64,000 nt of DNA from Macrostomum lignano. Taxonomy: Eukaryota. The notes below the pieces were generated by a model. It saw only the letters and a program-made list of their open reading frames with translations. It was not told the DNA's origin and searched no databases. Both the position numbers and the translations under genes were made by a program. Each line of letters starts with the position of its first letter. The stretch's first letter is position 1. The stretch lies in assembly GCA_002269645.1 (NCBI GenBank), contig NIVC01003372.1, positions 37,308 to 101,307 on the forward strand. Reading direction: 5' to 3'. This document shows, piece after piece, positions 32,904 through 59,400 of the stretch.

Positions 32904-33973
32904 ATGTATCTGCCTGAGCATAAATCGTACATATATTTCTTTCAGCAGATTTGAGAAAACTATTTTGTGCTTTGGCCTTTGAATTCAATACCAGCTAGTG
33001 TACAGTCTGTATCAAAGTACAAAGGCCAGCGCTCTTATTGATATGATATGACTTTGTAGATGAAAAACAGCATTATCTTGTGATGTATTTAAGTAAGTAT
33101 TACAAAAGAACTAATTAGTAGTAATAGAATAATAGTAGTCAAGAAGCAAAAAACATATCAAAATTTATATTGGAATAAATTTCACATTAAATCTGTGATG
33201 CGGGGTTTAAAAAGGCGCCACGCGACGTGAGGCAATTAGTCGGAAATTAGCGCAGTATAATAAACTTGTGGGCCCAAATATGTTCATATTACAACACTTT
33301 ATGTAAAACTAATAACAAAAAATAGTCCCGGGATTCGAGACCCCAAATCCCGGGATTTCGGGATCCCGGGATTGCAATCCCTAATTTGGTCTCTCATTTG
33401 GTTGCAGTGTGAATGAGCCTAGTTGCAAGTTGTTTACGCCTGCAAGCTTGGGCTTCTAAAAACTTATCAAAAATCAAAACCTATCAAAACCAACTTTATT
33501 CTTAACTTTCTTCTTATTCTTTGCAACTAAACTGAAAGCAGAAAGCCGCTTTACAAAGTATATACTCAGCAACATTGAAAAGTCGCCACCCTTTGCCCTA
33601 GTGTCCACTGTACAGTGAGCAGTTGTTTTTCGACCAGCGTCTATCTATCATCTGGCCATTGGCAAAATATTTTGATATTAAAAGCTTGAAAAAAGCAATG
33701 AAAACCGGGCAGAAGCTTCAATCCATTCAATCTTCGCAAGTTGCGTCACTTAAAAGTCAATTATACTGTGAGGTAGAATTTACTGTGTACTCTCAAAAGT
33801 TGAGACTTTTTAATGTAGTTGAGATATACCTCGTATGTCTGAGTGTGAGTATCTGTAATTTGTTGGGCCAAAGAACCTAGGAGAACCTTCCTCAATACTC
33901 TGATTAACACTGGCGGAGAGGGGAGGGCCGAGGGGTATCGCTCTCACGCTGAGGCCTGAGGGTTGAACTGGAA

Positions 33974-35760
33974 CACCCGACGACAACCGGCTAGCCGGGC
34001 CAAAAGCTTACAAAATCATCGGGCTAACCGGCAGGAAAGCGCGCTCTCGAGCTCTCGCTTTTCCCGGCTAGACGGGCCCAAAGCGCGCTCCCATACAATC
34101 AAATGGGAGTGTATCAATTGAAAGCTTTCACGGGTGTTTAATAACAATTTGCAGTAGAAAAATCGACGTTTGTTAATATTAATTCGCTTGCATGTAATTT
34201 GAAAACAAAATTTACAGGAATGAGCTAAGGTTCCTGTGTTCAACGTTCAACAAAAGCTTTTAAGGCATATTTGTTGTGCTACTGTGCATTGCTGTGCTGG
34301 CCTATGCACTAGACTGAACAAGTGAAGGCTTCGTGTACAAGATAAATGAAAGGAGCTTTTCTTAAATTTCTTGTACATTATTATGTGATTGCTTGAGTAA
34401 TTTTTTTCTATAGTTTTAAAGCCTGTCACGTGTCAGTTAATTAATAATACAGGCATTTGAAATATAAATGTAGGTCTAATATTATGAGAAGTAACTTATA
34501 AGCTGCTTTTATTCAATTATAAAAAGGCTTCAATTCAATTAAATTCTATTATTTAGCTATAGCCCTATGTGTACGAAAGCCTATTGAGCACTAAGCCTAG
34601 GCCTAGCTTATTGACTTGGCCTTAATGAATAGATTTAGCTAACTTACTAGATAAGAGCCTTAAAATTTTGTTTTTTTATCTATCTACTTTAATCTTTATG
34701 TATACCAATAGGCCTTTGACTAAATAACAAACTATAAAACTAAGCCTACAATATTTTATATCAAATACCTGATGTTTGACTTATTTTCCTTTCCTTAGTT
34801 CCCCTCTCCCCTAACCTTGGATTTCCTCCCTCTAAACCTAGCTTCTCTCCCCTTACCCTGGCTTCCTTCCTCTGACCCTGGCTTCTCTCCCCCTGACCCT
34901 GGCTTCCCTCCCCTGACCCTGGCTTCTCTCCCCTGACCCTGGCTTCCCTCCCTTGACCCTGGCTTCCCTCCCTTGACCCTGGCTTCTCTCCCCTGACTCT
35001 GGCTTCTCCCCCTGACCCTGGCTTCCTTCCCCTGACCCTGTCTTCCCTCCCCTGACCCTGGCTTCCATCCCCTGACCCTGGCTTCTCTCCCTTACCCTGG
35101 CTTCCTTCCTCTGACCCTGGCTTCTCTCCCCTGACCCTGGCTTCCCTCCCCTGATCCTGGCTTCTCTCCCCTGACCCTGGCTTCTCTCTGCCTGGCCCTG
35201 GCTTTTCTCCTTACTGACCCCTGGCTTCTCTCCCCCTGACCCTGGCTTCCTTCCCCTGACCGTGGCTTCTCTCCCCCTGACCCCTGGCTTCCCTCCTCCT
35301 GACCCGTGGCTTCCCTCCCTCCTGACCCCTGGCTTCCCTCCTCCTGACCCGTGGCTTCCCTCCCTCCTGACCCCTGGCTTCCCTCCTCCTGACCCGTGGC
35401 TTCCCTCCCTCCTGACCCGTGGCTTCCCTCCCTCCTGACCTTATCTTCCTTACCCGTATCTTCTGCCCTGCTCTGCCCTCTTGCTCTGACGTCTGCTGTC
35501 TGCTCTACCTTGCTCCTTTGCCCCCTGCTCTTCTGTCCTCTGGTTTTCTGCCCCCTGCTCTGCCCCCGCTGCTTTGCTCCCTGCTGTCTGCTCTACCCTG
35601 CTTCTCCGCCCTCTGCTAAAGTATTAGTACCAAGCAGCACAGCCTTTTTAATAAAAAAATCAAATTTTTTTTGTCAATTTATTGAAAGCACATTCTTCCT
35701 TCAGAAAAAGCTACCGGTGAAGCCCAGCTGCTGTCCCATTGGCACCTTTGCTTTTGCCTC
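33974..35760 (+). repeat. Left terminal inverted repeat of the giant element
   Basis: Near-identical to the reverse complement of 56726-57402 and 53520-53706; weaker homology to 51240-51420, possibly extending to ~35980/51170. Confidence 0.8.
34845..35445 (-). repeat. G-rich (minus strand) ~21-23-bp tandem repeat inside the left TIR (ctgaccctggcttc(t/c)ctccc)
   Basis: Reverse complement of the 51540-53510 array. Confidence 0.9.
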
Positions 35761-38274
35761 TGGTGCGATTGGCCTAGCAACAAACAAGCAGCTGTTCACC
35801 CACAAAAGCTATCCAAGCGCGAGCTTTCTTACTATATATGTACACACTGAGCTGAAATTAGTTTGTACGTACCGCCACTATGAGTTCTGATACACTGACA
35901 TCTGGTGCAACCGTTACGGCCGGGTCTGCCGCTGGTTCCACTTAAGCAGCCGCCTCAAACATCGCTGCTGCAGCCGAAACTGAAGCTGGCTCCGCCAAAG
36001 CTATTTTTTAATTCTTTAATATATGTCGACAATTCTTTTAACATTTAGATCACCGAATTCTGTTAATACATGTTCAGATCTTGTAAAGCTCAACAAAAGC
36101 ACCCATTTGTCATCGCCCTTTTCCAATATTGCTACTCGCATTACTCCCTGTGCAATGGGAGCCACACTCGACGTTTTTGGTGTCGTGTTTTTAGGTTGTT
36201 TATGGGTGAATTTTCCATTTTTAAAAGCATTTTTCGAGTCAATGCAGTTTGTAACATCGGAGCTTCATATATTAAATTGCTGTGATTTCTGGGAGACATT
36301 TTTTCGAGACGATACTGCTCTGTGACAGGGCGGTGTTCAACGTGTGCCATTTTAATTCAATCCTTGATCACAAAGCTTGGAGCAAGTGCCACTAGACTTC
36401 AGTGTCAGGCTTTCAGTTTAAGCAAATAATCCAAAATAATTTTGGCTGTACCATTTTGGACAAACAATGACCAACCCTGTCGAAATCCTGTTGTTTTTAC
36501 AGGTTCTTATATATCTACAAGGAACTGACAGGTGTTTTTTGTTGTTACCGCCAGTTAATTTTTTAAACTACTGCTCTTCATGAAGACGCGTGCAAAAAAT
36601 ACAGATATAAACTTTCATGTTACATACAATTATGACCAGGAGCTTTCCGATTTTAGTTGGTCATATAATTTTGTCGAATACTTGGTTTTGTGTTTCTGGA
36701 GTTATTTCTTAAATAGCATGCGCTCCGCAAAATTTTGTTGATTTAGCTTTACACTCCAGAAGTAAATTTTTCTCAGTGAACTCACATTTTAGTTCGCTCT
36801 TAGTGGTGCAGCTTAAGCATGTTTCGAATGCTCCCAGCAAGCTGCCGAGAGTTCCTGCACTGGCAAGAAAGGACGCTGCCTTGGTGTAGGGCGCTGAAGT
36901 GAACAAAAGTGCGCTCGATCGTCAGCGGTGCACATTTGCTGCATGGGCATTCCGTTTTGTGCTGAGCGGTGACGTACGCTTTTTTGAGGGGTCTGCAGTC
37001 CAGGCGGCGTCATGAAGGAGGGAGTGGGTGCTCCTGCTTCTGAGAAGCCCTCAGAGTACTCTGGAGTGAGAGTTCTGCTTCTCACGTTCGATGTAGTTGA
37101 AAAGTCCCCGAATGCTAGAATATGCACTGTGCCCTTTGACAACCATTGTTATATAAGGTCTTGGTTGCAAGCTTGGTGCTCCTGAATATAGACCAGGAAA
37201 TGTCTGTTAATGGTGTCTTGGTAAAAGTGCTCAAGAGAGAAATCTTCATGCGATTCTGATGAGCGCTCACCAGCTGGTGGGCCATGGGTATTCCGGCTAT
37301 AGTGGTTGCATGGAGCAAACCTGAGGCAGGGGTCTAGCAAGGAAGACTCACTTATTGTGTATTAAAAATTTACGCATATTCATACATGTAGGGTCTAATT
37401 GGGCTTTCAGCAACGCAGGGGAAGCGGCAAAATAAGGGCGGGGGCTCGCAGCAGTCTACTGATTCAGTCGGACTGCTAGTCTGGGGAGCTGTCAAAACAG
37501 CCGATGCGCGGTGCACCAGCTGCCGATGCTGCTTCAACCGCCTACCAACCTGTTCGCGCTGCCAGGAGCGAACTACAAATTAAGTTTTTCCGCTAGATCC
37601 AAGTCATGTGACGAAACCCGGGGGCTGCCTGAGAATATCTGTGTAAACCTCCGGGCTCTAGCGCTGAAAATTACCAGCCGCCATGCATGCCTCACAAGCA
37701 CTTTTCCACCTCTGGATGCTGTTTTGTAGCTGACGTTGCGGTCAAGTTTCAATTATCTCGACAGCGCGGGCCCGGGTTTTTGTTTGTTTGCCGAAGGGCG
37801 TGGCCGCCTCTGCAGTCACCTGTGCAGGAGTACACCCGAAAAACTCGACACTACTAGAAATGGCACGTACATGTAACACTCTAATGGACTCTATGCGAGG
37901 AGGCATACAAGGGATCGGTTTACTTGTAGTCAGTGCTGGAAATGAGGAATGTAAAGACTTTAGCATAAGGGGGATCTTTAGTTGGTGGGCGACTCTATAG
38001 GAAATGAAGGGGTTCCCGGCGGGGACCGGTGGTTCGGCCTCTCGGGAAAACAATAATAAAACAAAGCAACACGCGTTCAAAAACGGGTTCCTTTTTATAA
38101 TTCTCTGAGACACGCGATCACGTGAGCGTGTGATGTGTGACATTGAAGGCCGTGACCTGTCCTTGACCTCCGGTACCAAGCAATCCTGATGAACCCTCCT
38201 GGTGAACTTATCGCAGGTGCCTGCATGGTACGTGAGGAAATAAGGCGAGGCGAAGGCGACCTATGGTAAGATAT

Positions 38275-39144
38275 TGTAGTGCATGCGCCCTTGTCAGTTG
38301 GCAGGGCGCGTTGCACTTTGGGGCTGGTTGGGGGGGTTGGCGGGCGTGGCAGGGTCTGGCCCCGGCCGGGCTTTGCGCGTGCCCCTCCCCAGCCGTGCCC
38401 CTGCCCCGTGCTCAGGGCTGGTTGGCTGCGGCCGGGCCAGCTTTGGCGCGGGTGCAGCCCCTCCCCCCTTAGGCGGGGTTTTGATTGGCTGGGCCGGCGT
38501 GGTTTGTTTTGGTGAGCTTAGCCGGTGGGGCCGTCTGCCCCAGGGTTTGGGTGCTATTTATGGTGCGACTCTGGCTCTTGCCCACCACCTGCGTGCTTTT
38601 TGGTGTTTTGGTGTGCTCCGAGAGTGCAAGCGCGAGACCTGATAAAAGAAACAGCAACATTAGCTACTTGGATAAAAGAAACACAATAGCCTAATTGAGA
38701 AGAGTCTTGGAGAATTAAGAAGAAGTCGGAAACTGCGCTTGAGACCTGCGAATAATAAACGGTGAACAGTCATCTGGCCACTGGTAAGCCGCCTGCTGTT
38801 TGAGTCCTTTCTTTCCGGGAAGCTTGCTAGGCCGAATTCTTGCCAGAGCGTCATAACGCCGGGAGACCATATAGCTTCTGTAGTACGGTACCGTTTACCA
38901 TATATATTGCGTACGCCTTACGGTATAGAGAATAGAAGCACTCGAGAGTGTCACCACACCTCAAGCCGCAGCGTGAACTCTGAGTGTCACAACACCAGAG
39001 GGATCGAATTATTATCGCAGAGCGTCGCCACGCCTGCTCGTCGTATTCATAAAAGTACAGACAGAGCGTCACAACGCCTGTTATTTCACATATAATATAT
39101 ATTGTACTCGGGACTGGGCACCCAAGCCGACCCGGGTTACAACA
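38275..39144 (+). repeat. 5' LTR (870 bp)
   Basis: TGTAGT...TACAACA; AATAAA at 38754-38759; matches 47249-48118 at a constant offset of 8974. Confidence 0.95.
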
Positions 39145-39147
39145 AAT

Positions 39148-39165
39148 TGGCGCCCGAACAGGGAC
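39148..39165 (+). promoter_or_regulatory. Primer-binding site complementary to the 3' end of tRNA-Lys(UUU)
   Basis: TGGCGCCCGAACAGGGAC, 3 nt after the LTR. Confidence 0.92.
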
Positions 39166-39389
39166 CCTGTCCCCAAAGATTGAAAGTCGGCTCAGTTGCT
39201 TTCTATGAAAATTGCTGTCATATTGTGAGCGTTTTTTCTTATTAAAACGACTGTTGCTTATCGCTTGCGGCTATTGCCCTACCGCAAAAGACATTGATCA
39301 CGGTGACAGACAACTGATTGGTTATCAGAGATCGATAGCTATCACCACCTCAGAGTAAAGAGTAGCAACGGTATTCAGTGACTTCGGCC

Positions 39390-40310
39390 ATGGGTGATCA
39401 AGCTATGGACCAACTGATCGATGCGCTGGCTGCGCGCCTCAGAGCCAACGCCGACCGAGCAGCGCCACGACTCTCGAAGCCGCCCAAGTACATACCAACG
39501 ATGAATTTCAGCCTATGGCTGCAGAGTTTCAACGAGTACTGCGAGGCTGTCGGTATAGAAGAAGAAGCCAGGCGGCCGCACCTGATCGGCCTACTCGACC
39601 TCACAACAGCCTACGCTGCCGTTGATAAGCTGGACTTGGCAGACGACATCGAGTACGGGGAATTCACGGATGCACTACTGGCGCGGTTCACCATGAACAG
39701 AACAGCCCAGGACTACCGTTTTGAATTATCGAATCGAGATCAGCTAGACAAGGAGTCTGTGGAGACCTACGGGGACGAGCTGCTGGAGTTGGTGCGCAAT
39801 GCCTTCCCCACCGCGGATGCCGACACCAGGACAGAGCTGGCGAAAGACAGATTTCTAAAAGGCGTTCGAGTAACCGACACTGTCCGAGAAAGACTGTACC
39901 TGCAGCAGCCGGCCAACCTCACCGATGCCATTCGAACAGTAAGACAACTTGAAGCAGCCCAGAAGGCGTCTTCGACCCAGTCCAAAGCCAGACCCAGGGC
40001 TGGGCTGAATGCCTTTGCCACCGAAACGTCGACAGGTGACACCGGCAAAGACGAGGAGCTACGCCAACTGCGTCAAAAAGTAAAGGAAATGGAAGAAAAG
40101 ATCCGACGGATGGAGCAGATGCAGCAGGGCCAGCAGGAGCCGCCCGAACCCGGCCTTCAAGACAAGCAACAATCCAAGCAGGCGGCTCCGTCCAGCTCGA
40201 AGCAGCGTAGCGGTGTCAAGTGCTACAACTGCGGGGAGATAGGCCATCTCTCATTCCAGTGCCCAAAGCCGGGAAAAGGCAAGAGGGGCCCACCAGCTGG
40301 AGGCAAGTGA
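39390..40310 (+). CDS. gag: Gypsy Gag with CCHC zinc knuckle
   Basis: gccATGg start, capsid-like region, and CYNCGEIGHLSFQC. Confidence 0.92.
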   Translation: MGDQAMDQLIDALAARLRANADRAAPRLSKPPKYIPTMNFSLWLQSFNEYCEAVGIEEEARRPHLIGLLDLTTAYAAVDKLDLADDIEYGEFTDALLARFTMNRTAQDYRFELSNRDQLDKESVETYGDELLELVRNAFPTADADTRTELAKDRFLKGVRVTDTVRERLYLQQPANLTDAIRTVRQLEAAQKASSTQSKARPRAGLNAFATETSTGDTGKDEELRQLRQKVKEMEEKIRRMEQMQQGQQEPPEPGLQDKQQSKQAAPSSSKQRSGVKCYNCGEIGHLSFQCPKPGKGKRGPPAGGK

Positions 40311-43300
40311 GCCCCTGCAATTCGTCAGCCTCCGAACAAGCCGTCATCTCATCTCATCATCATCAAACGCCCGGTACCGCATCTCATCAGCCTCCAGTGT
40401 CCGGTACTGCGCCTCATCAGAATCCAGTGTCCGGTACTGCGTCTCATCAGCCTCCAGTGTCCGGTACAGTACCTCATCAGCATCCAGTGTCCGGTACTGC
40501 GGCTCATCAGCATCCAGTGTCCGGTACTGCGCCTCATCAGCATCCAGTGTCCGGTACAGCGTCTCATCAGCCTCCAGTGTCCGGTACTGCGTCTCATCAG
40601 CATCCAGTGTTCGGTACAGTACCTCATCAGCATCCAGTGTCCGGTACTGCGTCTCATCAGCCTCCAGTGTCCGGTACAGTACCTCATCAGCATCCAGTGT
40701 CCGGTACTGCGGCTCATCAGCATCCAGTGTCCGGTACTGCGCCTCATCAGCATCCAGTGTCCGGTACAGCGTCTCATCAGCCTCCAGTGTCCGGTACTGC
40801 GTCTCATCAGCATCCAGTGTTCGGTACAGTACCTCATCAGCATCCAGTGTCCGGTACTGCGTCTCATCAGCCTCCAGTGTCCGGTACAGTATCTCATCAG
40901 CATCCAGTGTCCGGTACTGCGTCTCATCAGCATCCAGTGTCCGGTACTGCGCCTCATCAGCATCCAGTGTCCGGTACTGCGTCTCATCAGCCTCTAGTGT
41001 CCGGTACTGCGTCTCATCAGCCTCCAGTGTCCGGTACTGCGTCTCATCAGCATCCAGTGTCCGGTACAGTGCCTCATCAGCCTCCAGCGTCCGGTACTGC
41101 ACCTCACCATCAACTAGCCGGTTTTGCACAGTCGCAGCGCCCAATCACCGTCAACGCACCTCAGTCAATTCAAATCAATCCTGCGTCGATATATGTTACG
41201 GCCTCAATCGCAGGGCGGAGGGTGAACGCGCTAGTGGACTCGGGAGCTTCCTGCACCATTATCTCACGGGAAGCTTACCAAAGTATGCCGAAACAGAGCG
41301 TCAGAGATTTGGCCGGTGCTGAAGGCTACGTTAGCTTAGCAAACGGCAGCCCGATCGAAATCGAGAGAACAGTCCTGTTGCGACTGTCAATCGCTGATAA
41401 AGTAATAGATACTCCAGCCTTGGTAGTCAGCGGAGTGAAGTACCAACTGGTATTGGGATCCGACTTCTGCAGGGACAACAGTTGCGTCATCGACTACAAG
41501 ACAGCTGTCTTTTCAGTGCAGGACACTGCAATCCCGTTCCGATGGCAAGCTGAGCGCCCGATCGTTTGCAGAATTTTGGCGACAAGGTCCAGCACAATAC
41601 CGCCAGGTCATCAAGCAGTTCTGTCAGCAAGGCTGGAGAGCAAAGGACGACGGAACAGAGGGTGTGTCGGCCTAACTGAGAATCTCGGGGCGAACGATTT
41701 GGCAGCTGGCCGCTGGCTTGCTAAGGCCTTAGTGATCCCAAATAGCGGCAGCCGTCTGCCGACTCGACTCATCAATATCACGGAGGAGCCAGTCAGAATT
41801 CGCCAAGGTTGTACGCTCGGGTGGTTCTGCCCCCTAGAATCCACCGAACCGTTGAACACCATCAAGCTCTTAGCCGTAGAGTCAGGAGACGATCCACAGG
41901 AAGAGCCGAAGGTCCAAGGCAGCAACAGCCCTTCGGAAGCAGACTTGCTACCAAACTCGTACGGCGACTGTGGACTGTCGACGAAAGAAGACGAAGAATT
42001 TAGAATCCTTGTCCGGAGTTACAGCGATGTGTTCACGACCAAGCAGACTTCAAGCAAGTTAACTACCGTGGTGGAGCATGAAATTAACACCGAGAATGCG
42101 CGCCCAATCAAGATCCCACCGCGTCGTCTGCCTCCCCACTTACAGCCAGAAGTAGATCGTCAAGTCAACGAGTTGCTGGAAAAGGGGCAGATCGAAGAAG
42201 CACAGTCACCATGGTGCTTTCCTTTGGTGTGTGTAAAGAAGAAATCAGGGGAAATGAGGATGTGCGTCGATTATCGGAAGTTGAATGAGGTCACCGTCAA
42301 GGATGCAGTGCCGATGCCGAGGGTCGATGATGCGCTGGAGGCAGTACACGGCGCCAAGATCTTCTCGACAATGGACCTTCACAGCGGGTTTTGGCAAGTA
42401 GGGGTGAGACCTCAGGATCAGGACAAGACGGCGTTTGCAGTGCCGCATCGCGGACCATTTCGATGGAAGGTTATGCCGTTCGGCTTAGTGAACAGCCCAG
42501 CAACATTCACCAGGTTGATGGCAGCCGTTCTGGACAAGCAGATATGGAAAACCTGTCTCGTCTACATCGACGATCTACTGGTTTGGTCAACCGACGTGGA
42601 TGAACACCTGAGAAGACTGGAGGAAATATTCAGCAAGTTGCGGCAAGCAAATTTGTGCCTGAAGCCCCAGAAGTGTCACTTTTTGCAAAAGCAAGTGAAA
42701 TTTCTCGGTCACACGCTGTCGGCTGCTGGCATCAGTACCGATGAGGAGAAAGTTCAAGAAGTGAAGAACTGGCCAACACCGCGATCCTCGACGGAGCTGC
42801 ATTCATTCTTGGGCCTGTGTGGCTATTACAGAAAGTTTATTAAAGATTTCGCCGCAATAGCAGCGCCTCTAACTCGATTGACAACAAAAGACGCAAAGTT
42901 TGAATGGAAAACGGAACAGCAGCTGGCGTTCGAAACATTGAAGGAACGAATGACAAGTTCAGAGGTTATGGCTCATCCGGATTTCTCCCCGGATGCCGGA
43001 GAGTTTATCCTCGATACTGATGGCAGTTCGAAGATGGGCATAGGAGCGGTACTTTCTCAAGTCCAGCCAGATGGAGCAGAACGAGTGATCGCCTATGGGT
43101 CCAAGACACTAAATCAAGCCGAACGCAACTATTGTACGACTCGTTTAGAACTACTAGCGGTTGTGACTTTCATCATGAAGTTCAGATACTATCTGCTTGG
43201 AAAAGCGTTCTGTCTGCGAACGGACCACAGCAGCCTGCAATGGTTAAAAAACTTCAGTGACGCCGAGGGACAGGTTGCTCGCTGGTTGGAGAAGTTGGCT

Positions 43301-45007: not shown

Positions 45008-45421
45008 TGGGTTACTCGTCATCGTGAAGTCTCATCAGTTTCATATGCGATTATCGTTAAAAGCCAGAAAAATATTTCGCGAATGCGTCATTCATCATAA
45101 ATACGAGTACTTCATCAATGCATCATTCATCATGAGTACGAGCAGTTCGCCAATGCGTCATTCAAGAAATTCGTTAATGCGTCATTAAGTCATTTTAATC
45201 GCATCTTCATCGAAGTTTTGACGAGAATCAAATTTTGCCTACAAAATCTATGCATCGGTGGAGGGTATTCGGACTGGCATCCGGTGAAAACTCGAATTGG
45301 CGCTGGGACTTTACGATGCAGGGCCACGGTCCGAGGAGATGACGCTCTGGCAAGAGGGGAGCAGGAGTAAAATCTGGAGTCAGGGACAGTGTGTCGCAGG
45401 TTTGAGTACGTTGCTTTGCAG

Positions 45422-47236: not shown

Positions 47237-47248
47237 AGGAGGGGAGGG
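47237..47248 (+). promoter_or_regulatory. Polypurine tract
   Basis: AGGAGGGGAGGG immediately before the 3' LTR TG, preceded by a T-run. Confidence 0.9.
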
Positions 47249-48118
47249 TGTAGTGCATGCGCCCTTGTCAGTTGGCAGGGCGCGTTGCACTTTGGGGCTG
47301 GTTGGGGGGGTTGGCGGGCGTGGCAGGGTCTGGCCCCGGCCGGGCTTTGCGCGTGCCCCTCCCCAGCCGTGCCCCTGCCCCGTGCTCAGGGCTGGTTGGC
47401 TGCGGCCGGGCCAGCTTTGGCGCGGGTGCAGCCCCTCCCCCCTTAGGCGGGGTTTTGATTGGCTGGGCCGGCGTGGTTTGTTTTGGTGAGCTTAGCCGGT
47501 GGGGCCGTCTGCCCCAGGGTTTGGGTGCTATTTATGGTGCGACTCTGGCTCTTGCCCACCACCTGCGTGCTTTTTGGTGTTTTGGTGTGCTCCGAGAGTG
47601 CAAGCGCGAGACCTGATAAAAGAAACAGCAACATTAGCTACTTGGATAAAAGAAACACAATAGCCTAATTGAGAAGAGTCTTGGAGAATTAAGAAGAAGT
47701 CGGAAACTGCGCTTGAGACCTGCGAATAATAAACGGTGAACAGTCATCTGGCCACTGGTAAGCCGCCTGCTGTTTGAGTCCTTTCTTTCCGGGAAGCTTG
47801 CTAGGCCGAATTCTTGCCAGAGCGTCATAACGCCGGGAGACCATATAGCTTCTGTAGTACGGTACCGTTTACCATATATATTGCGTACGCCTTACGGTAT
47901 AGAGAATAGAAGCACTCGAGAGTGTCACCACACCTCAAGCCGCAGCGTGAACTCTGAGTGTCACAACACCAGAGGGATCGAATTATTATCGCAGAGCGTC
48001 GCCACGCCTGCTCGTCGTATTCATAAAAGTACAGACAGAGCGTCACAACGCCTGTTATTTCACATATAATATATATTGTACTCGGGACTGGGCACCCAAG
48101 CCGACCCGGGTTACAACA
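47249..48118 (+). repeat. 3' LTR (870 bp)
   Basis: Matches the 5' LTR; followed by TSD ATAT. Confidence 0.95.
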
Positions 48119-49946: not shown

Positions 49947-50310
49947 TCAAAAAAGGTCGTCACTAGCGCCATGCTGGCTGCAAAACTTCGCCTTCACGAG
50001 TGCCCAGGTGCCTTCGATGTTGTTTGTGGGCACAGTTGGATCGTTTGGATCAACGAAATGCAGACGGTGATTGACAAACACCTGGGGAAGCGCACTATAT
50101 ACATGCCAGCCGTCAGTTAAAATGCGTGTCCCAGGCAACACATCTGCTGAATAATCTGACTCAGCAGACCGGTTGGGTACTTGTACCATCATGCATTTGC
50201 GTGTACCTTGCTCGACCATCCCAAGCACCCAGTGGCCCTCGCGGTAAGCTCCCTGGTAATATTTGCGATGAAAAAATTGGACTCATCCACTTCAACTTCT
50301 CTTCCTTTTA
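49947..50310 (-). pseudogene. Decayed Merlin / IS1595 (ISXO2-like) DDE transposase fragment
   Basis: Across frameshifts: VEVDES, then HRKYYQGAYREGHWVLGMVEQGTRKCMMVQVPNRSAE, then VLPGTRILTDGW..Y...VNHRLHFVDP...TNNIEGTWALVK. These are the IS1595/Merlin catalytic motifs. Confidence 0.85.
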
Positions 50311-50695
50311 TTGGCTTTTTTATTGCAAACAAAAAAGAACAATTATTTCTGTTTTCGTACAACATATCCTTTATTTTTTTCTCGCTTATCGCACATTCCA
50401 TTGTCAGCTGCTAGTATTTTCTATTTGTCGTTCTTTTTAAAAAAAAATGGCACAATTCAGGTACACTAAATGGCACACTATAATAAAAAACGAGAAAAGA
50501 ACACGGACAATTCGATTTAACAATTCCACAAGACTTAGCAACAGCCGCAAAAACGAACGTACCACGACGTGAACACCTACAAGTCAACTTATGATTTTTT
50601 GACCAAAATATAAAATATGCAGAAGGTACAAGTGGTCAGTTCAGCCACACTGTTAGAGCGCGACGACAGTCCTTTGGTCAAACCTCTCAGCTCTC

Positions 50696-50812
50696 AACTT
50701 CCACCACCTTCCCGCTCTCAGCTCCCGCCACCTTCCCGCTCTCAGCTCCCGCCACCTTCCCGCTCTCAGCTCCCGCCACCTTCCCGCTCTCAGCTCCCGC
50801 CACCTTACCGCT
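50696..50812. repeat. 24-bp tandem repeat (ccaccttcccgctctcagctcccg), about 5 copies
   Basis: Directly visible. Confidence 0.9.
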
Positions 50813-51539
50813 CTCCTCGCCTCTGCCAAAATTAGATATGGCTTGTCAATGCATGGCTTTTGTGTTATGGCTATTGGTGACTTGTGAAACCTCACTAACG
50901 GTGATCGGTACTAATGCGTGTATATGTGCATGCATAGAGTACATGAGCAAGAAACTAACAAGTTATGGATAAAAGTAGAGCAAGGGTAAAAGGTACGGAT
51001 AAACAAAGTTAAAAAATTGACTGTAAATAAAGCTAACAGGAACTGTCAATGATACGAATTTCCATTTGCTGACAGCTCAAGACAAAATCCTTTCAACGAC
51101 CGTTCCATTCTGAGCTAACTTTGATACGATCACCGCATTGCTGAAGGTTATGGTACGCTTTGCACCGACTGTAGCGTTGTTCGAGGCGGCTGCTTAGGCA
51201 GAACCAGCGGCAGTCCCGGCCGCAGCAGCGTTCTTCGAGGCGGAGACCAAAGCAAAGGTGCCAATAGGACAGCAGCTGGGCTTCACCGGTAGCTATTTCT
51301 GAAGGAAGAATGTGCTTTCAATAAGCTGTGCTGCTTGGTACTAATACGAGACTAGTTTTAGCAGAGGGCGGAGAAGCAGGGTACAGCAGATAGCAGAGAG
51401 GGCAGAGCAGGAAGCAAAGCCGTGCGGACAGAGCAGAAGGCAGAAAACCAGGAGGCAGAGCAGGAGAGAAAGAGCAAGGAGGCAGAGCCACTGGTCAAGA
51501 GTGAGGGAAGCCATGGGTCAGTAGAGGAAGCCATGGGTC

Positions 51540-53510
51540 AGGAGAGAGGGAAACAAGGGTCAGGAGTGAGGGAATCCAGGGTTCAGGAGAGAGGGAGCCA
51601 TGGGTCAGGAGGGAGGGAAGCCAGGGGGTCAGGAGGGAGGGAAACAAGGGTCAGGAGGGAGAGAAGCCAGGGTCAGGGGAGGGAAGCCAGGGTCAGGGGG
51701 AGAGAAGCCAGGGTCAGGGGAAGGAAGCCAGGGTCAGTAAGGAGAAAAGCCAGGGTCAGGGGGAGAGAAGCCAGAGTCAGGGGAAGGAAGCCAGGGTCAG
51801 GATAGGGAAGCCAGGGTCGGGGGAGAGAAGCCAGGGTCAGGGGAGAGAAGCCAGGGTCGGGGGAGAGAAGCTAGGGTCAGGGGAGGGAAGCCAAGGTCTG
51901 GGGAAGGAAGCCAGGGTCAGGGCAGGGAAGCTAGGGTCAGGGGAAGAAAGAAGCCAGGGTCAAGGGAGGGAAGCCAGGGTCAGGACAGGGAAGCCAGGGT
52001 CAGGGGAGAGAAGCCAGGGGTTAGTAAGGAGAAAAGCCAGGCCAGGCAGAGAGAAGCCAGGGTCAGGGGAGAGAAGCCAGGGTCAGGGGAGAGAAGCTAG
52101 GGTCAAGGGAGGGAAGCCAGGGTCAGGGGAGGAGAGAAGCCAGGGTCAGGGGAGGGAAGCCAGGGTCACGGGAGGGAAGCCAGGGTCAGGGGGGAGAAGC
52201 CAGGGTCAGGGGAGGGAAGCCAGGGTCAGGGGGAGAAGCCAGGGTCAGGGGAGGGAAGCCAGGGTCAGGGGAGGGAAGCCAGGGTCGAGGAGGGAAGCCA
52301 GGGTCAGGGGGGAGAAGCCAGGGTCAGGGGAGGGAAGCCAGGGTCAGGGGGGAGAAGCCAGGGTCAGGGGAAGGAAGCCAGGGTCAGGGGAGAGAAGCCA
52401 GGGTCAGGGGAGGGAAGCCAGGGTCAGGGGAGGGAAGCCAGGGTCAGGGGAGGGAAGCCAGGGTCAAGGGAGGGAAGCCAGGGTCAGGGGAGGAGAGAAG
52501 CCAGGGTCAGGGGAGGGAAGCCAGGGTCACGGGAGGGAAGCCAGGGTCAGGGGGGAGAAGCCAGGGTCAGGGGAGGGAAGCCAGGGTCAGGGGGGAGAAC
52601 CCAGGGTCAGGGGAGGGAAGCCAGGGTCAGGGGAGGGAAGCCAAGGTCGAGGAGGGAAGCCAGGGTCAGGGGGAGAGAAGCCAGGGTCAGGGGAGAGAAG
52701 CCAGGGTCAGGGGAGGGAAGCCAGGGTCGGGGAGGGAAGCTAGGGTCAGGGGGAGAGAAGCTAGGGTCAAGGGGAGAGAAGTCAGGGTCAGGGGAAGGAA
52801 GCCAGGGTCAGGGGAGGGAAGCCAGGGTCAAGGGAGGGAAGCCAGGGTCAGGAGAGGGAAGCCAGGGTCAGGGGAGGGAAGCCAGGGTCAGGGGAGAGAA
52901 GCCAGGGCCAAGTGGAGAGAAGCCAGGGTCGAGGGTTGTGAAGCCAGGGTCAGGGGAAGGAAGCCAGGGTCAGAGAGGAGAGAAGCCAGGGTCAGGGGAG
53001 GAGAAAAGCCAGGGTCAGGGAAGGGAAGCCAGGGTCAGGGGAGTGAAGCCAGGGTCAGGGAGGAGAGAAGCCAGGGGTCAGTAAGGAGAGAAGCCAGGGT
53101 CAGGGGGAGGGAAGCCAAGGTCAGGAGAGGGAAGCCAAGGATTAGGAAGGAGGGAAGCCAGGGGTCAGGGGGAGAGAAGCCAGGGTCAGGGGAGGGAAGC
53201 CAGGGTCAGGGGAGGGAAGCTAGGGTCAGGGGGAGAAGCCAGGGTCAGGGGGAGAAGCCAGGGTCAGGGGAGGGAAGCCGGGGCCAAGTAGAGAGAAGCC
53301 AGGGTCAGGGGAAGGAAGCCAGGGTCAGGGGAAGGAAGCCAGGGTCAGGGGAGGGAAGCCAGGGTCAGGGGAAGGAAGCCAGGGTCAGGGAGGAGAGAAG
53401 CCAGGGGTCAGGGGAGGAGAAAAGCCAGGGTCAGGGAAGGGAAGCCAGGGTCAGGGGAGTGAAGCCAGGGTCAGGGAGGAGAGAAGCCAGGGGTCAGTAA
53501 GGAGAGAAGC
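51540..53510 (+). repeat. G-rich ~21-23-bp tandem repeat (agccagggtcaggggagggaag) inside the right TIR
   Basis: About 2 kb, versus about 0.6 kb for the homologous array in the left TIR. Confidence 0.95.
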
Positions 53511-54394
53511 TAGGGTTAGAGGGAGGAAATCCAAGGTTAGGGGAGAGGGGAACTAAGGAAAGGAAAATAAGTCAAACATCAGGTATTTGATATAAAATAT
53601 TGTAGGCTTAGTTTTATAGTTTGTTATTTAGTCAAAGGCCTATTGGTATACATAAAGATTAAAGTAGATAGATAAAAAAAACAAAATTTTAAGGCTCTTA
53701 TCTAGTCCAATATACTAAAAATGGTCTGTCGGTATGTGTGTGTGTGTATGTGTGTGTGTGTGATCGATTTTAGCAAAAACGGCTCAACCGATTTTCTTCG
53801 AACTTGCACTGTTCGATCAGAAATTTTCCCGTGACAGTACATGCATCGTGGCTAAGAAATTGCTTGATGCTAAAGGGATTAAATATTCGAAAAACATGCT
53901 TTTTTGCAAAGGTCAAGCAGCTCTTTCGACTTGAAATGCATCGTAAGAATGCTAGCAGAAAAACTGACTGGTTGAATTCTGATTCTGAAATAGATTGCAT
54001 CACAATACACTTTATTTATCGTCTGTGTACTGGCTGAATTTGACACTCAATTGAATTGCGTCACAGCTTTGAGTGTGAAAGCATAGCGCAGTACTGAATT
54101 TATATTACGTAACCATATTGTAAACTTTCATAGACACTGGTACTGACTTGCCTAAGAAATTGATTATGTCATAACTGCTTCGTGAGACTTTTTACTCTAC
54201 CTGACTTGGTGTGAGTGTTGAATTATATAAGTGGTACAACATCACTGATAACTTCGATGAGAGCTAGCCTAGAGCTGAACAGACCAGACTGCTAATGCAG
54301 CGACCTAGGTTCGAATCTAAGTAGTTTAAAAGTAGTAGTGTAAAATTTTTTATTAAAAGGTTTTATTAAAGGACTAAATAAAAACACTTAGATT

Positions 54395-55935
54395 ACTGCA
54401 CTCGATAAGCCAAGGATTATTGCTATTAATAAACCAAGGACTACTGCACTCGATAAACCAAGGACTATTGCTCTTGGCAAACCAAAGATTACTGCACTTG
54501 ATTAATCAAGGATTATTGCTATTAATAAACCAAGGATTACGGCACTTGGAAAACCAAGGATTACTGCACTCGATAAACCAAGGACTATTGCTCTTGGCAA
54601 ACCAAGGATTACTGCACTCAAGAAGCCAAGAATTATTGCACTTGGAAAACCAAGGATTAATGCACTCGATAAACCAAGGACTATTGCTCTTGGCAAACCA
54701 AGGATTACTGCACTCAAGAAGCCAAGGATTATTGCTATTAATAAACCAAGGATTACTGCACTTGGAAAACCAAGGATTACTGCACTCGATAAACCAAGGA
54801 CTATTGCTCTTGGCAAACCAAGGATTACTGCACTCAAGAAGCCAAGGATTATTGCACTTGGAAAACCAAGGATTACTGCACTCGATAAACCAAGGACTAT
54901 TGCACTTGATAAACCAAGGAATATTGCACTTGATAGGCCAAGGATTACTGCACTTGATAAACCAAGGATTATTGCACTTGATAAACCAAGGATTATTGCT
55001 CTTGGCAAACCAAGGATTACTGCACTCGATAAGCCAAGGATTATTGCTCTTAATAAACCAAGGATTACTGCACTTGGAAAACTAAGGATTACTGCACTCG
55101 ATAAACTAAGGATTATTGCTCTTGGCAAACCAAGGATTATTGCACTTGATAGGCCAAGGATTACTGCACTTGATAAACCAAGGATTATTGCACTTGATAA
55201 ACCAAGGATTATTGCACTTGATAAGCCAAGGATTATTGCACTTGATAGGCCAAGGATTACTGCGCTTGATAAACCAAGGACTATTGCACTTGATAAACCA
55301 AGGATTATTGCAGTTGATAAGCCAAGGATTATTGCACTTGATAAACCAAGGATTATTGCACTTGATAAACCAAGGATTATTGCACTTGATAAACCAAGGA
55401 TTATTGCACTTGATAGGCCAAGGATTACTGCACTTGATAAACCAAGGATTATTGCACTTGATAGGCCAAAGATTACTGCGCTTGATAAACCAAGGATTAT
55501 TGCAGTTGATAAGCCAAGGATTATTGCACTTGATAAACCAAGGATTATTGCACTTGATAAACCAAGGATTATTTCACTTGATAAACCAAGGATTATTGCA
55601 CTTGATAAACAAATATTGCACTTGATAAACCAAGGATTATTGCACCTGATAAGCCAAGGATTACTGCGCTAGATAAACCAAGGATTATTGCACTTGATAA
55701 ACCAAGGATTATTGCACTTAATAAACCAAGGATTATTGCACTTGATAAACCAAGGATTATTGCACTTGATAAACAAAGGATTATTGCACTTGATAAACCA
55801 AGGATTATTGCACTTGATAAGCCAAAGATTACTGCACTTGATAAACCAAGGATTATTGCACTTGATAAACCAAGGATTATTGCACTTGATTAATCAAGGA
55901 TTATTGCTATTAATAAACCAAGGATTATTGCACTA
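54395..55935. repeat. 24-bp minisatellite (aaccaaggattattgcacttgata) inside the Helitron-like element
   Basis: About 60 copies; source of the LHLINQGL ORFs. Confidence 0.95.
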
Positions 55936-56069
55936 GCTGAGAAGCTGATTACTGCGCTGTCTAAAAAAGAGATTATTGCGCTCGCTGAGACGTGGATTGT
56001 TGCACAACCTGAGAAAGCGATTATTGCATTAGCGGAAGTAACATTTGCACTAGCTACTTGCTGTCTCGT

Positions 56070-56455
56070 GGATGCTTGCTCTCGAGGGGGGATACTTGCT
56101 ATTTGGGAGAGGGGGTACTGCCTACATGCATGGGATTCTTTCTATCCAGGGATGCTTGCTATTCAGGGATTCTTGCTATCTGCAGGATGCTTGCTATTTA
56201 GGGATTCTTGCTATCTGCAGGATGCTTGCTATCTGGGTGGATGCTTCTATAATATCTGGGGGGTGCTTGCTATCTGCAGGATGCTTCTATAATATCTGGG
56301 GGTGCTTGATATCTGCATGATTGCTTGCTATCTGAGTGGATGCTTGCTATCTGGGTGGATGCTTCTATAATATCTGGGGGGTGCTTGCTAATCTGCAGAT
56401 GCTTGCTATCTGTGGTGATTCTTGCTATGAGCATTAGAGGATGCTTGCTATCTGC
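56070..56455. repeat. Degenerate ggatgcttgctatct-type repeats inside the Helitron-like element
   Basis: Visible imperfect copies. Confidence 0.75.
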
Positions 56456-59400
56456 GATTGTTCACTTTTGGAGGGGGTTGCTTGCTGTCTTGGGAATATT
56501 TTCTATTTAGTGAAACGATATTTTGTTGACTGTTTGTTAATTTTAGAGAAAAAGTGATTTTTAATTTTGCAAACATCTTAGTCTGTGACAATTTTACACG
56601 AATAAGGTGATTTTTAAAATGTGAAGAAGGAATTAATGTTTAAGAAAATGTGTTTTTTTATTGTTTTCCATGAACTATTTTTGCTCCTTTCTTATTGGGC
56701 GCCCGAAGGGGGCCGCACTAGATTGCTAGTAAGTTAGCTAAATCTATTCATTAAGGCCAAGTCAATAAGCTAGGCCTAGGCTTAGTGCTCAATAGGCTTT
56801 CGTACACACAGGGCTATAGCTAAATAATAGAATTTAATTGAATTGAAGCCTTTTTATAATTGAATAAAAGCAGCTTATAAGTTACTTCTCATAATATTAG
56901 ACCTACATTTATATTTCAAATGCCTGTATTATTAATTAACTGACACGTGACAGGCTTTAAAACTATAGAAAAAAATTACTCAAGCAATCACATAATAATG
57001 CACAAGAAATTTAAGAAAAGCTCCTTTCATTTATCTTGTACACGAAGCCTTCACTTGTTCAGTCTAGTGCATAGGCCAGCACAGCAATGCACAGTAGCAC
57101 AACAAATATGCCTTAAAAGCTTTTGTTGAACGTTGAACACAGGAACCTTAGCTCATTCCTGTAAATTTTGTTTTCAAATTACATGCAAGCGAATTAATAT
57201 TAACAAACGTCGATTTTTCTACTGCAAATTGTTATTAAACACCCGTGAAAGCTTTCAATTGATACACTCCCATTTGATTGTATGGGAGCGCGCTTTGGGC
57301 CCGTCTAGCCGGGAAAAGCGAGAGCTCGAGAGCGCGCTTTCCTGCCGGTTAGCCCGATGATTTTGTAAGCTTTTGGCCCGGCTAGCCGGTTGTCGTCGGG
57401 TGACTGGAAAGGCGGGCGTCTGGGCTTTGTCTATCGATTTTTTAAGAGACACAGAAGAGCGCGGAGGGCGGGAGTGTACTTAGCCCAGTGTACACTTGGG
57501 TGGGAGGGGGGCTTTCAACTTTTCACTCACCCAACCGAGGCTGAGGGAGGGCGAAGGAGACGAGAGAGGGAAGCTCTGGTCGTCTAGAAAAGAAGTTATA
57601 TACATTTTAAAAGCTTCTTGCGCACGGCAGCAACGAAACAGACTTTGTCTCATATACACAGGTCCCTAGTACAGCTACTAGAGCAAATCATTAGGTAAGT
57701 GGCGATTGCAGATGCAGCTAAACGTTTTATAATGCTTACATTATATTAAGAGTTGTATTCTCGAATACAACTAATGAATTTAGGTAATTCACAGATAAAG
57801 TCAGTGGAATGATTGACAGCTAGAGATTCCAATCTCGGGATCCTAGGATTTGGCCTCTAAAGCCAGGATTTCAGTCCTAGGATTTTTCATCAATAGAATA
57901 AGAAATCCTGGGATTGCAAATGCAATTTATCATAAAAAATATTTTTTCATTGTGTCTAATGAAATGTATGCCATCCAGATAATGTTGGCTGCATGCCAAA
58001 TTGTGAAAAAATTGTTTGCACGCCAAGGATGCAGAGTTTTTTGAAATTGCACACCAAAATTGCCAATGAAGGGGCAGCGTGATAGAGAATGTAGCCAATT
58101 GTCAATTACTTTGCTGACATTGTATTGCGTAGCTCTCGGGTCAGAAAAAATGGTATCCGATGCCCTTTGTATAAAAAAGACAACATATTTTTCACTTTAA
58201 AGAGACAAACTTGCTTCCATTTTTGTATTTACCAAAAAGCAATATTAAACAGAATAATTTATTTATTTATATTATTTACAGTCTAATTTACAAAACTTAA
58301 AATTTTTTTACAGATTAACAGAACAGAAAATTCTGTTTTAGTCATTCAAAGTCCATTATATAATTGATTAATATTTATAATTGTAAATACAGATACATAA
58401 AACACACATTTGATCTCTTTTTAAATGCAATGTACGATGGCACGCTAAACCATCGCCATCCACCCATAGTCCGGATTGTGCTGGCTGCACGCCCGAAAAA
58501 AATTTCTAGGCCATAGTGCATGCAAAAAAAAATAGTTTTGCACGCCAAAAAAATGCATTGAGAAAAAACAAGTGTCAAGCCCGTCAAAAGCTGCCGATGT
58601 ATGGATAGCGGAGAGCCCTTGCTTCCGCTTGTCCATGGCCTTGCTGACATTGTAGTGTGTTGCCTGCGCATCGACAAAAAATGGCGTACGATGTTTGCGC
58701 AGCCGCCTGTCAGCGTCACCGCTGTAGTAAAGCTACACGCACTTGTCTAGGAAGTGCTCACGCGATTGGCTTCCTAAAGGTGGCAGCATCCACTGCAGCT
58801 TTGTCCTAAGCTAAAGTGTGTTGTTGCTCTGACTGCCCTGCTGCTGCTGGGAACACATAGTAAAGTAAAATGACTCCACTATGGCTTTTAAAAGGTTAGA
58901 TAAAATTGAATTTCTGTTATTGGATATAGAAAAAATGTATAAAATAAAAGAAAATTTACCAGAACCACCACAACACAGTGCGAAGTCCAGCAGTGCGCAA
59001 GCTTTCTGCCTAGCCAGATTGAAGATGCGTGGGTCATTATAAAATGACCGGTAGATGCCACATTCATCTACTGTGGTGACAAAACGATTGCCATCTTGCA
59101 TTTCAACTGCCAAGTGCAGAGCCAGATCTGCTAGACGTTGCGATGGGGCGCGCTTTAGACTGACAATCTCGCCACTGATAGCTGGGTTTAACTAGCCCTC
59201 GCGGCCATCGCCAGATAGCAATGTCTTGTGAATGGCATTCATGTACAAAGCAACGTAGAGTCGAGACAGATGCTTGTCCAAGTTCTGCAGGTGCTTAAAC
59301 TGCAAGGCCTGTTTGACCAGTCGGAAGGACGAAGCGGACAATGTCAGCTCCTCAACTTTGAGGCTGACTTTGTTGGCCGACTCGGACACCAAGATGCTAA

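What the first reader, a model, noticed from the sequence alone, without database searches (positions are those of the whole stretch)
33967..57409. 23.4-kb element bounded by kb-long inverted repeats and an exact 7-bp TSD
Seen: the inverted homology ends sharply at 33974 (CACCCGACGAC...) and 57402, and both ends are flanked by ACTGGAA. In the outer ~680 bp of the TIRs I noticed only one substitution (the Y/H difference between the twin ORFs at 34247 and 56947). Without the nested Gypsy and Helitron, the element is about 10.5 kb with ~5 kb of unique interior and no intact transposase. Established: long TIRs with internal tandem repeats and 7-bp TSDs characterise Galileo-type foldback elements of the P superfamily, which also generate inversions. 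Inference: this is a young, large, cargo-carrying foldback/P-like element, or a composite of two inverted copies that moved as one unit. It is easily missed because it looks like two unrelated repeats.
Basis: partly seen in the sequence, partly recalled or inferred. Interest (0 to 1): 0.85.

Follow-up and report, generated by a model that had tools for sequence, protein, structure and literature searches.

The report
Long-TIR foldback-type DNA transposon insertion
This is a real, recently inserted "foldback-type" DNA transposon with kilobase-long inverted ends and a clean 7-bp target duplication, later invaded by two other mobile elements; it belongs to a known structural kind, carries no genes, and cannot be assigned to a transposon superfamily from this one copy.

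Summary
Inverted homology starts exactly at 33974 and 57402, and both ends abut the same 7-mer, ACTGGAA. The outer ~830 bp of the arms differ by two substitutions (not one) and one T-run indel.

Each arm is modular:
- a GC-rich 115-bp tip with three copies of a 21-bp motif;
- an AT-rich outer domain;
- a 20-bp minisatellite (about 30 copies on the left, about 100 on the right);
- a CT-rich inner domain.

Two later insertions are precisely delimited. One is a Ty3/Gypsy element with identical LTRs and a 4-bp TSD. The other is a 3-kb Helitron-like element inside the right arm. Without them the element is 10,557 bp with about 5.6 kb of unique interior.

A single foldback-type TIR-transposon insertion is well supported. 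"P-like" rests only on TSD length and architecture. No THAP or P transposase trace exists. However, Merlin's hallmarks (GG termini, 8-9-bp TSD) are not met either. No cargo gene was found. The arms have no inner ends of their own, so it is not a composite. No second copy could be found, so the superfamily stays unresolved. Interest is modest.

The parts
33967..33973 (.). Left copy of the 7-bp target-site duplication, ACTGGAA
   Evidence: Read directly. It is identical to 57403-57409.
33974..34088 (+). Left terminus. A GC-rich (63%) 115-bp tip that starts CACCCGACGAC and carries three copies of the 21-bp motif CCGGCTAG(C/A)CGGGCC(C)AAAGC at 33987, 34020 and 34064. These are candidate transposase-binding sites (inferred).
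   Evidence: The mirror-image copies lie at 57369-57389, 57336-57356 and 57292-57312.
34089..34803 (+). Left TIR outer domain. AT-rich (GC 31%) and non-coding.
   Evidence: Its ORFs of 75 aa or less have no homologues.
34804..35455 (+). Left TIR middle domain. A 20-bp minisatellite (TCCCCTGACCCTGGCTTCCT), about 30 copies.
35456..35760 (+). Left TIR inner domain. CT-rich, about 90% identical to the right arm, with indels.
35761..38270 (.). Unique interior, left part. No recognisable coding content.
   Evidence: The six-frame Pfam scan was empty, the ORF segment scan was empty, and the homology search found nothing.
38275..48118 (+). Nested Ty3/Gypsy LTR retrotransposon. LTRs are 38275-39144 and 47249-48118 at 100% identity. 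The 4-bp TSD ATAT lies at 38271-38274 and 48119-48122. It has gag, an intact 1595-aa pol and an extra J-domain ORF.
48123..51242 (.). Unique interior, right part. Non-coding apart from the transposase remnant. It contains a 24-bp x5 array at 50690-50815.
49880..50452 (-). Frameshifted remnant of an IS1595/Merlin-type DDE transposase. It matches residues ~112-308 of 316-aa relatives and includes all three catalytic positions. It has at least 2 frameshifts and 1 in-frame stop, and the N-terminal ~110 aa are missing.
   Evidence: Pfam PF12762 E=4.3e-7. Homologues at about 60% identity. tblastn mapping.
51243..51502 (-). Right TIR inner domain.
51503..53547 (-). Right TIR middle domain. The same 20-bp minisatellite in reverse-complement orientation, expanded to about 100 copies.
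53548..53705 (-). Right TIR outer domain, inner piece. It matches 34651-34803 apart from one T-run indel.
53706..56729 (+). Nested 3-kb non-autonomous Helitron-like insertion in the right arm. It reads 5'-TC...GC hairpin...CTAG-3'. The alternative reading is a 3,019-bp insert with a 5-bp duplication CTAGT. It carries a 24-bp x64 array and a 17/18-bp array.
56730..57402 (-). Right TIR outer domain and terminus. It ends ...GTCGTCGGGTG.
57403..57409 (.). Right copy of the 7-bp target-site duplication, ACTGGAA

Best explanation
The region is one insertion of a non-autonomous, foldback-type (very long TIR) cut-and-paste DNA transposon, 10.56 kb long when it landed.

Inferred mechanism: a DDE transposase supplied in trans binds the GC-rich 115-bp tips, probably at the thrice-repeated 21-bp motif. 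It excises the element and integrates it across a 7-bp staggered cut at ACTGGAA. Gap repair then produces the flanking duplication.

Shown by the sequence: the arms are modular (tip, AT-rich outer domain, 20-bp minisatellite, inner domain). The minisatellite has since changed in length independently in the two arms, most simply by slippage or unequal exchange.

After insertion, a Helitron-like element entered the right arm. A Ty3/Gypsy retrotransposon then entered the unique interior very recently, as its LTRs are identical.

The element has no working gene of its own. Its only transposase vestige is a decayed IS1595/Merlin-type DDE gene. The superfamily is therefore unresolved. My estimates are: derived from an IS1595/Merlin-like lineage about 0.4, P/Galileo-like about 0.25, other about 0.35.
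For: - Sharp ends of inverted homology with an exact 7-bp direct repeat on both sides.
- The outer 830 bp differ by only 2 substitutions and 1 indel.
- The terminal 23-mer occurs only at the two ends of the window.
- A 21-bp subterminal motif is repeated three times in each tip.
- The same 20-bp array sits in both arms at different copy numbers.
- Both nested elements are precisely delimited with their own junction signatures. One arm is interrupted and the other is not, which rules out a simple assembly palindrome.
- The interior is non-coding apart from a PF12762 remnant.
- An intact hAT element 2.4 kb away shows a clean 8-bp TSD. This genome therefore holds young DNA transposons, and TSDs can be read reliably here.
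Against: - Only one copy is available. No second copy, empty site or autonomous partner was found in the window or in any searchable collection. Mobility is inferred from structure alone.
- The 7-bp TSD and CAC terminus fit neither the Merlin rules (GG termini, 8-9 bp; PMC8101967) nor any coding evidence for P.
- The transposase-binding role of the 21-bp motif is inferred.
Confidence: 0.78

Rival explanations
1. One reading: a Galileo-like foldback member of the P superfamily, mobilised by a THAP-domain P-type transposase encoded elsewhere in the genome.
For: The TSD is 7 bp, as in Galileo, and P-superfamily TSDs are 7-8 bp. Very long TIRs with internal tandem repeats and TE insertions are documented for Galileo (PMC4168063, read). 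The terminus starts with CA.
Against: There is no THAP or P-transposase similarity anywhere in the interior, by six-frame Pfam scans and ORF scans, or among the longer ORFs of the rest of the window scanned against Pfam. The TSD ACTGGAA does not fit the palindromic GTANTAC consensus, although that is one instance only. TSD length alone does not define a superfamily. The only transposase vestige present is of another superfamily.
Confidence: 0.25
2. A long-TIR, non-autonomous derivative of an IS1595/Merlin-type transposon lineage. On this view the decayed DDE gene at 49880-50452 is the element's own former transposase. The lineage would differ from canonical Merlin in making 7-bp TSDs and having CAC rather than GG termini.
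For: It is the only transposase-like sequence in the element, and no other IS1595-like fragment exists in the 64-kb window. Its 5' end points toward the nearby inner edge of the right arm, as expected for an element's own gene. The closest intact relative recovered (L006, a 1.6-kb element with 98-bp TIRs) also lacks GG termini; its TIRs start ATCACGTGAC. From memory of ISfinder, bacterial IS1016-group elements make 7-9-bp duplications.
Against: Merlin is defined by 8-9-bp TSDs, GG termini and TIRs of 24-462 bp (PMC8101967), and none of these is met. TIR similarity to L006 is not significant: local alignment scores fall within the shuffle range, and the anchored match is 10-11 of 20. The remnant is truncated and frameshifted and could equally be an old nested fragment. 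About 4 kb of unrelated non-coding DNA lies downstream of it.
Confidence: 0.4
3. A composite unit: two independent ~1.8-kb elements in inverted orientation captured 5.6 kb of host DNA and moved together, using their outer ends.
For: The arms are long and similar, and the interior is anonymous non-coding DNA.
Against: Neither arm has an inner copy of the terminal sequence. The 11-mer allowing 1 mismatch was searched across the window, and the 9-mer allowing 2 mismatches at the arms' inner boundaries. Arm homology fades gradually through a CT-rich region rather than ending at a defined inner terminus. No solo arm-like copy exists in the window.
Confidence: 0.05
4. Not a transposon: an inverted segmental duplication or a fold-back assembly artefact.
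For: Near-identical kilobase inverted repeats can arise from chimeric long reads or from template switching during replication.
Against: There is an exact 7-bp direct repeat at the two outer junctions. The arms are asymmetric, with 30 vs 100 array copies and a 3-kb insertion in one arm only. The 5.6-kb interior is non-palindromic and holds an independently inserted Gypsy element.
Confidence: 0.03

Closest known systems
Galileo (P superfamily, Drosophila)
   Same: Both have 7-bp TSDs and kilobase-long TIRs that contain tandem repeats and nested TEs. TIR length varies between arms, many copies lack a transposase, and the structure can drive ectopic recombination (PMC4168063).
   Different: There is no THAP or P-type transposase trace here. 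The TSD is not GTANTAC-like. The host is not a drosophilid; it is a eukaryote, probably an animal, judging from weak rhodopsin-type GPCR and Vestigial/Tondu domain hits. The only internal transposase vestige is IS1595-type.
Classical foldback elements (Drosophila FB, sea-urchin TU elements, Tetris, nematode Tm1)
   Same: The inverted arms are modular (unique outer domain, short-unit tandem array, inner domain), there is little or no coding capacity, and arm lengths are unequal. TU and FB details are from memory; Tetris and Tm1 are known to me only from search listings (PMC4079207, PMC3169594).
   Different: From memory, FB-type and Mutator-type foldback elements make 9-bp TSDs and TU elements 8-bp. 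Here the TSD is 7 bp. No sequence similarity was tested, because no reference sequences were available.
Merlin / IS1595-type transposons
   Same: The interior contains a DDE_Tnp_IS1595 transposase remnant about 60% identical to intact 314-326-aa proteins.
   Different: Merlin has GG termini, 8-9-bp TSDs, TIRs of 462 bp or less, and compact size (PMC8101967). This element has CAC termini, a 7-bp TSD, TIRs of 1.8 kb or more, and a 10.6-kb body.
Dada transposons
   Same: TSDs of 6-7 bp (PMC3706591).
   Different: Dada elements lack TIRs and insert into snRNA or tRNA genes. This element has long TIRs, and no small-RNA gene lies at or near the target.

Membership tests
P superfamily / Galileo | Encodes, or derives from an element encoding, a THAP-domain P-type transposase | tested here: not met
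   Six-frame Pfam scans of 35400-38280 and 48120-49960, plus ORF scans of 49950-51317, gave no THAP or Tnp_P_element hit at E<=0.1. A non-autonomous copy could have lost all trace, so this weakens the claim but does not exclude it.
P superfamily / Galileo | 7-8-bp target-site duplication | tested here: met
   Exact 7-bp ACTGGAA on both sides.
P superfamily / Galileo | Palindromic target consensus GTANTAC (Galileo) | tested here: inconclusive
   ACTGGAA does not match, but this is a single insertion. The consensus is taken from PMC4168063.
P superfamily / Galileo | Conserved terminal nucleotides shared with P, 1360 and Galileo TIRs | not tested
   No reference terminal sequences were available in the tools. 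Only the initial CA can be noted.
Foldback-type elements (structural class) | Very long TIRs built of an outer unique domain, a short-unit tandem array and an inner domain, with little coding capacity | tested here: met
Merlin / IS1595 superfamily | DDE_Tnp_IS1595 transposase belonging to the element | tested here: inconclusive
   A remnant is present at 49880-50452 on the minus strand. Whether the element owns it cannot be shown from one copy.
Merlin / IS1595 superfamily | 8-9-bp TSD | tested here: not met
   The TSD is exactly 7 bp. The rule is from PMC8101967.
Merlin / IS1595 superfamily | TIRs begin with 5'-GG | tested here: not met
   The TIR begins CACCCGACG. The rule is from PMC8101967. 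The nearest intact relative, L006, also lacks GG.
Dada | Insertion inside multicopy small-RNA genes, and no TIRs | tested here: not met
   Rfam and ARAGORN find no RNA gene in the window. Long TIRs are present.
hAT | 8-bp TSD and short TIRs | tested here: not met
   The TSD here is 7 bp. By contrast, the neighbouring genuine hAT element (59796-63614) has an 8-bp TSD and 16-bp TIRs.
Composite transposon | Each arm is a complete element with both of its own termini | tested here: not met
   No inner copy of the terminal motif was found.

The most novel reading that the evidence does not exclude
The decayed IS1595-type gene is the element's own former transposase. The element would then represent an undescribed animal lineage of IS1595/Merlin-related transposons that has evolved foldback-style kilobase TIRs with minisatellites, CAC termini and 7-bp rather than 8-9-bp target duplications.
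Probability: 0.3. Interest if true: 0.5.

Novelty: new member of a known kind. Interest (0 to 1): 0.33.

Why it matters
This is a cleanly resolved example of a young foldback-type DNA transposon with a readable insertion history: host element, then a Helitron-like insert, then a Gypsy element.

Elements of this kind matter for three reasons. Their long inverted arms can form hairpins. They can promote inversions and deletions by ectopic recombination. They are also routinely mis-annotated as two unrelated repeats, or broken in assemblies.

If genome-wide copies link these termini to an IS1595/Merlin-type transposase, the known TSD and terminus rules of that superfamily would widen. If they link to a P-type enzyme, Galileo-like architecture would extend beyond drosophilids. 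On present evidence it adds a family, not a principle.

Tried and rejected
Searches for other copies:
- The terminal 23-mer, 11-mer and 9-mer in the window match only the two ends, plus chance near-matches.
- A sensitive BLAST of the outer and inner domains against the window found nothing.
- Exact-pattern scans of metagenome and viral contig collections with the terminus and with the 21-bp motif gave zero hits.
- A protein-level search with concatenated TIR-encoded ORFs gave zero hits.

Finding the source genome:
- Exact look-ups of eight window ORFs and of the hAT transposase were not on record, so the organism could not be named.

Cargo or a hidden transposase:
- Pfam scans on ORF segments and on full six-frame translations of both interior halves found only the IS1595 remnant.
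- A homology search with 2,384 aa of concatenated interior ORFs found nothing.

Linking the TIRs to the IS1595 family:
- Five long contigs with related but decayed transposases (L001-L005) share only the coding part.
- An intact 1.6-kb relative (L006) has 98-bp TIRs with no significant similarity to ours. Its contig is too short to read a TSD.
- Further contigs (L007-L010) lack the ends.

An empty-site paralogue is not present in the window.

A second 'foldback' at 10.7-11.7 kb and 19.6-20.0 kb was rejected: it is only GA-rich against CT-rich low-complexity arrays.

The near-match CACCCGCCGAC at 27918 was rejected as chance: its orientation is wrong relative to the nearby array, and 0.43 such hits are expected.


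Full report
**Observation**

The window is a minisatellite-rich eukaryotic sequence of about 47% GC. A self-comparison shows a 677-bp inverted repeat, 33974-34650 against 57402-56726, at 99.7% identity. The sequences read directly are ...gagggttga-ACTGGAA-CACCCGACGAC... on the left and ...GTCGTCGGGTG-ACTGGAA-aggcgggcg... on the right. The inverted homology therefore stops exactly at 33974 and 57402, and both ends abut the same 7-mer. The base outside each arm breaks complementarity. No 8- or 9-bp reading gives a direct repeat, so the duplication is exactly 7 bp, with a chance of about 6e-5 at fixed positions.

The 'twin ORFs' are 60-aa chance ORFs without homologues.

**Anatomy of the arms**

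Each arm is modular.
- (i) A GC-rich (63%) 115-bp tip carries three copies of a 21-bp motif, CCGGCTAG(C/A)CGGGCC(C)AAAGC.
- (ii) An AT-rich (31% GC) outer domain extends to 34803. The stretch 34651-34803 is identical to 53706-53548 apart from one T-run indel.
- (iii) A 20-bp minisatellite follows, with about 30 copies on the left (34804-35455) and about 100 on the right (51503-53547).
- (iv) A CT-rich inner domain is about 90% identical with indels, fading at about 35760 / 51243.

The left arm is about 1.8 kb. The right arm is about 3.1 kb plus a 3-kb insertion.

**Nested elements**

The right arm is interrupted exactly between the positions matching 34650 and 34651. The insert, 53706-56729, reads 5'-TC...CTAG-3'. 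A GC-rich imperfect hairpin lies 11 nt before its 3' end. Alternatively it is 3,019 bp flanked by a 5-bp duplication, CTAGT. It has no coding capacity and carries a 24-bp x64 array and a 17/18-bp array. The hairpin alone is not statistically remarkable (z = -1.1). 'Helitron-like' is therefore plausible but not proven.

The interior is split by a Ty3/Gypsy element at 38275-48118.
- Its 870-bp LTRs are 100% identical and end TG...CA.
- It has a 4-bp TSD, ATAT, and the primer-binding site TGGCGCCCGAACAGGGAC.
- It has gag with a zinc knuckle.
- Its intact 1595-aa pol has the order protease, RT, RNase H, integrase.

**What the interior encodes**

Stop-free segments and complete six-frame translations were scanned against Pfam. 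These covered both interior halves. They gave a single hit: DDE_Tnp_IS1595 (PF12762, E = 4.3e-7) at 49950-50282 on the minus strand.

tblastn with intact 316-326-aa relatives maps the remnant to 49880-50452. That corresponds to residues ~112-308 and includes the three catalytic positions (VEVDES, TDGW, NNIEG). The remnant has at least two frameshifts and one in-frame stop, and the N-terminal ~110 aa are undetectable. It is a pseudogene.

No THAP, P-transposase, hAT or MULE signal is present. A homology search with 2,384 aa of concatenated interior ORFs found nothing. There is thus no evidence for cargo genes. The 'cargo' is nested TEs plus anonymous DNA.

**Is it one element?**

The terminal 23-mer occurs only at the two ends. 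The terminal 9- and 11-mers have no inverted partner at the inner edges of the arms. The arms are therefore not complete elements in their own right, and the composite model is disfavoured.

The asymmetry of the arms, the non-palindromic interior and the exact TSD also argue against an inverted duplication or a fold-back assembly artefact.

A genuine, intact hAT element lies 2.4 kb to the right, at 59796-63614. It has 16-bp TIRs (CAGTGGCGGATCCAGG), an 8-bp TSD (ATGCCACT) and an 856-aa transposase with DUF4371 and the hAT dimerisation domain. This is a useful internal control. Young DNA transposons and clean TSDs exist in this genome, and the 7-bp duplication of the long-TIR element is distinct from hAT's 8 bp.

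**Which superfamily?**

This could not be settled.

[quoted passage not shown] Galileo has 7-bp TSDs with consensus GTANTAC, TIRs up to 4.7 kb with tandem repeats and nested TEs, and a THAP-type transposase (PMC4168063). Here no P-type coding trace exists, and the TSD does not resemble GTANTAC.

For Merlin/IS1595, the support is the internal remnant. It is the only transposase-like sequence in the element and the only IS1595-like fragment in the window. However, Merlin is defined by GG termini, 8-9-bp TSDs and TIRs of 24-462 bp (PMC8101967), and none of these is met.

The closest intact relative I could recover is a 1.6-kb element on a metagenome contig (L006). It has 98-bp TIRs beginning ATCACGTGAC, so it is not GG-type either. 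Its TIRs show no significant similarity to ours, and the contig is too short to read a TSD. Older copies in another assembly (L001-L005) share only the coding region.

Dada makes 6-7-bp TSDs but lacks TIRs and targets small-RNA genes (PMC3706591). No RNA gene is present in the window.

My estimates are: IS1595/Merlin-derived lineage about 0.4, P-like about 0.25, other or unknown about 0.35.

**Mechanism**

The structure and the order of events are shown. An element with long TIRs inserted at ACTGGAA. The Helitron-like element entered one arm. The Gypsy element inserted last, as its LTRs are identical.

The following steps are inferred:
- cut-and-paste transposition by a DDE transposase supplied in trans;
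- recognition of the repeated 21-bp motif in the tips;
- a 7-bp staggered target cut;
- independent slippage or unequal exchange in the two minisatellites;
- the near-identity of the outer domains reflecting recent insertion, gene conversion between arms, or both.

**What could not be done**

The decisive test needs other copies of these termini, with their TSDs and any intact ORF. That requires the source genome, which is in none of the searchable collections.
- Exact look-ups failed.
- Protein searches with TIR ORFs found nothing.
- DNA pattern scans of the metagenome and viral collections were empty.
The organism is probably an animal, judging from weak rhodopsin-type GPCR and Vestigial/Tondu hits, but it could not be named.

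**Verdict**

It is a new member of a known structural kind. The most novel reading still open is a long-TIR, 7-bp-TSD offshoot of the IS1595/Merlin group.

Noticed in passing
window 59796-63614: An apparently intact, autonomous hAT transposon. It has 16-bp perfect TIRs (CAGTGGCGGATCCAGG), an exact 8-bp TSD (ATGCCACT at 59788-59795 and 63615-63622) and an uninterrupted 856-aa transposase ORF (60231-62798, minus strand) with DUF4371 and the hAT dimerisation domain.
   Followed up: yes
window 38275-48118 (ORF 45389-46366; array 40352-41100): The nested Ty3/Gypsy element carries an extra 326-aa ORF downstream of pol with a clear DnaJ/J domain (Pfam E=5.8e-18). It also has 25 in-frame copies of a 30-bp repeat at the N-terminus of the pol ORF and a 20/32-bp array before the 3' LTR. 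A J-domain ORF in an LTR retrotransposon is unusual.
   Followed up: partly
window 53706-56729: A non-autonomous Helitron-like insert with TC...CTAG ends at a CTAG|T site rather than the canonical A|T site. About half of it is a 24-bp x64 satellite (54391-55934), plus a 17/18-bp array (56132-56455). It resembles satellite-carrying Helitron/Helentron derivatives (comparison from memory).
   Followed up: partly
window 1-32000: Minisatellite density is extraordinary. There are at least 15 arrays with units of 4-146 bp. They include a 4.7-kb array of a 21-bp unit (13864-18579, ~226 copies), a 26-bp x73 array (7211-9140) and an 8-bp x193 array (20543-22084).
   Followed up: no
window 26341-27689: An 18-bp minisatellite (GGAGTCAGGGTGGTCAGG, ~75 copies) is about 64% similar over its whole length to the TIR minisatellite of the element, sharing a CAGGGT..CAGGGG core. 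No TIR outer domain lies next to it. It could be a relic of a related element or a coincidence of G-rich units.
   Followed up: partly
window 10770-11668 and 19679-19969: A GA-rich 14-bp array and a (CTCTC)n array appear as an 8-kb-spaced inverted repeat in dot-plots. This is low-complexity complementarity only, with no unique outer domains, so it is not a second foldback element.
   Followed up: yes
L006 1-1607 (ENA ERZ27264358 k141_419422); L008 and L009 starts: L006 looks like a complete 1.6-kb IS1595/Merlin-type element. It has an intact 314-aa transposase and 98-bp TIRs (87% identity) that begin ATCACGTGAC rather than the GG said to be universal for Merlin. Related contigs L008 and L009 begin with irregular TG-rich repeats (TGGGTGTGTTTGG...). 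In L008 this is the point where homology to L006 stops. That looks like telomere-style healing or some other unexplained junction.
   Followed up: partly
window 28974-29687 and 23057-24337: Two possible host-gene fragments: a rhodopsin-family GPCR-like ORF (7tm_1, E=1.2e-5) and a 427-aa ORF with a weak Vestigial/Tondu motif (E=4e-4). Both score below Pfam's gathering thresholds. They are the only hints that the genome is from an animal.
   Followed up: no
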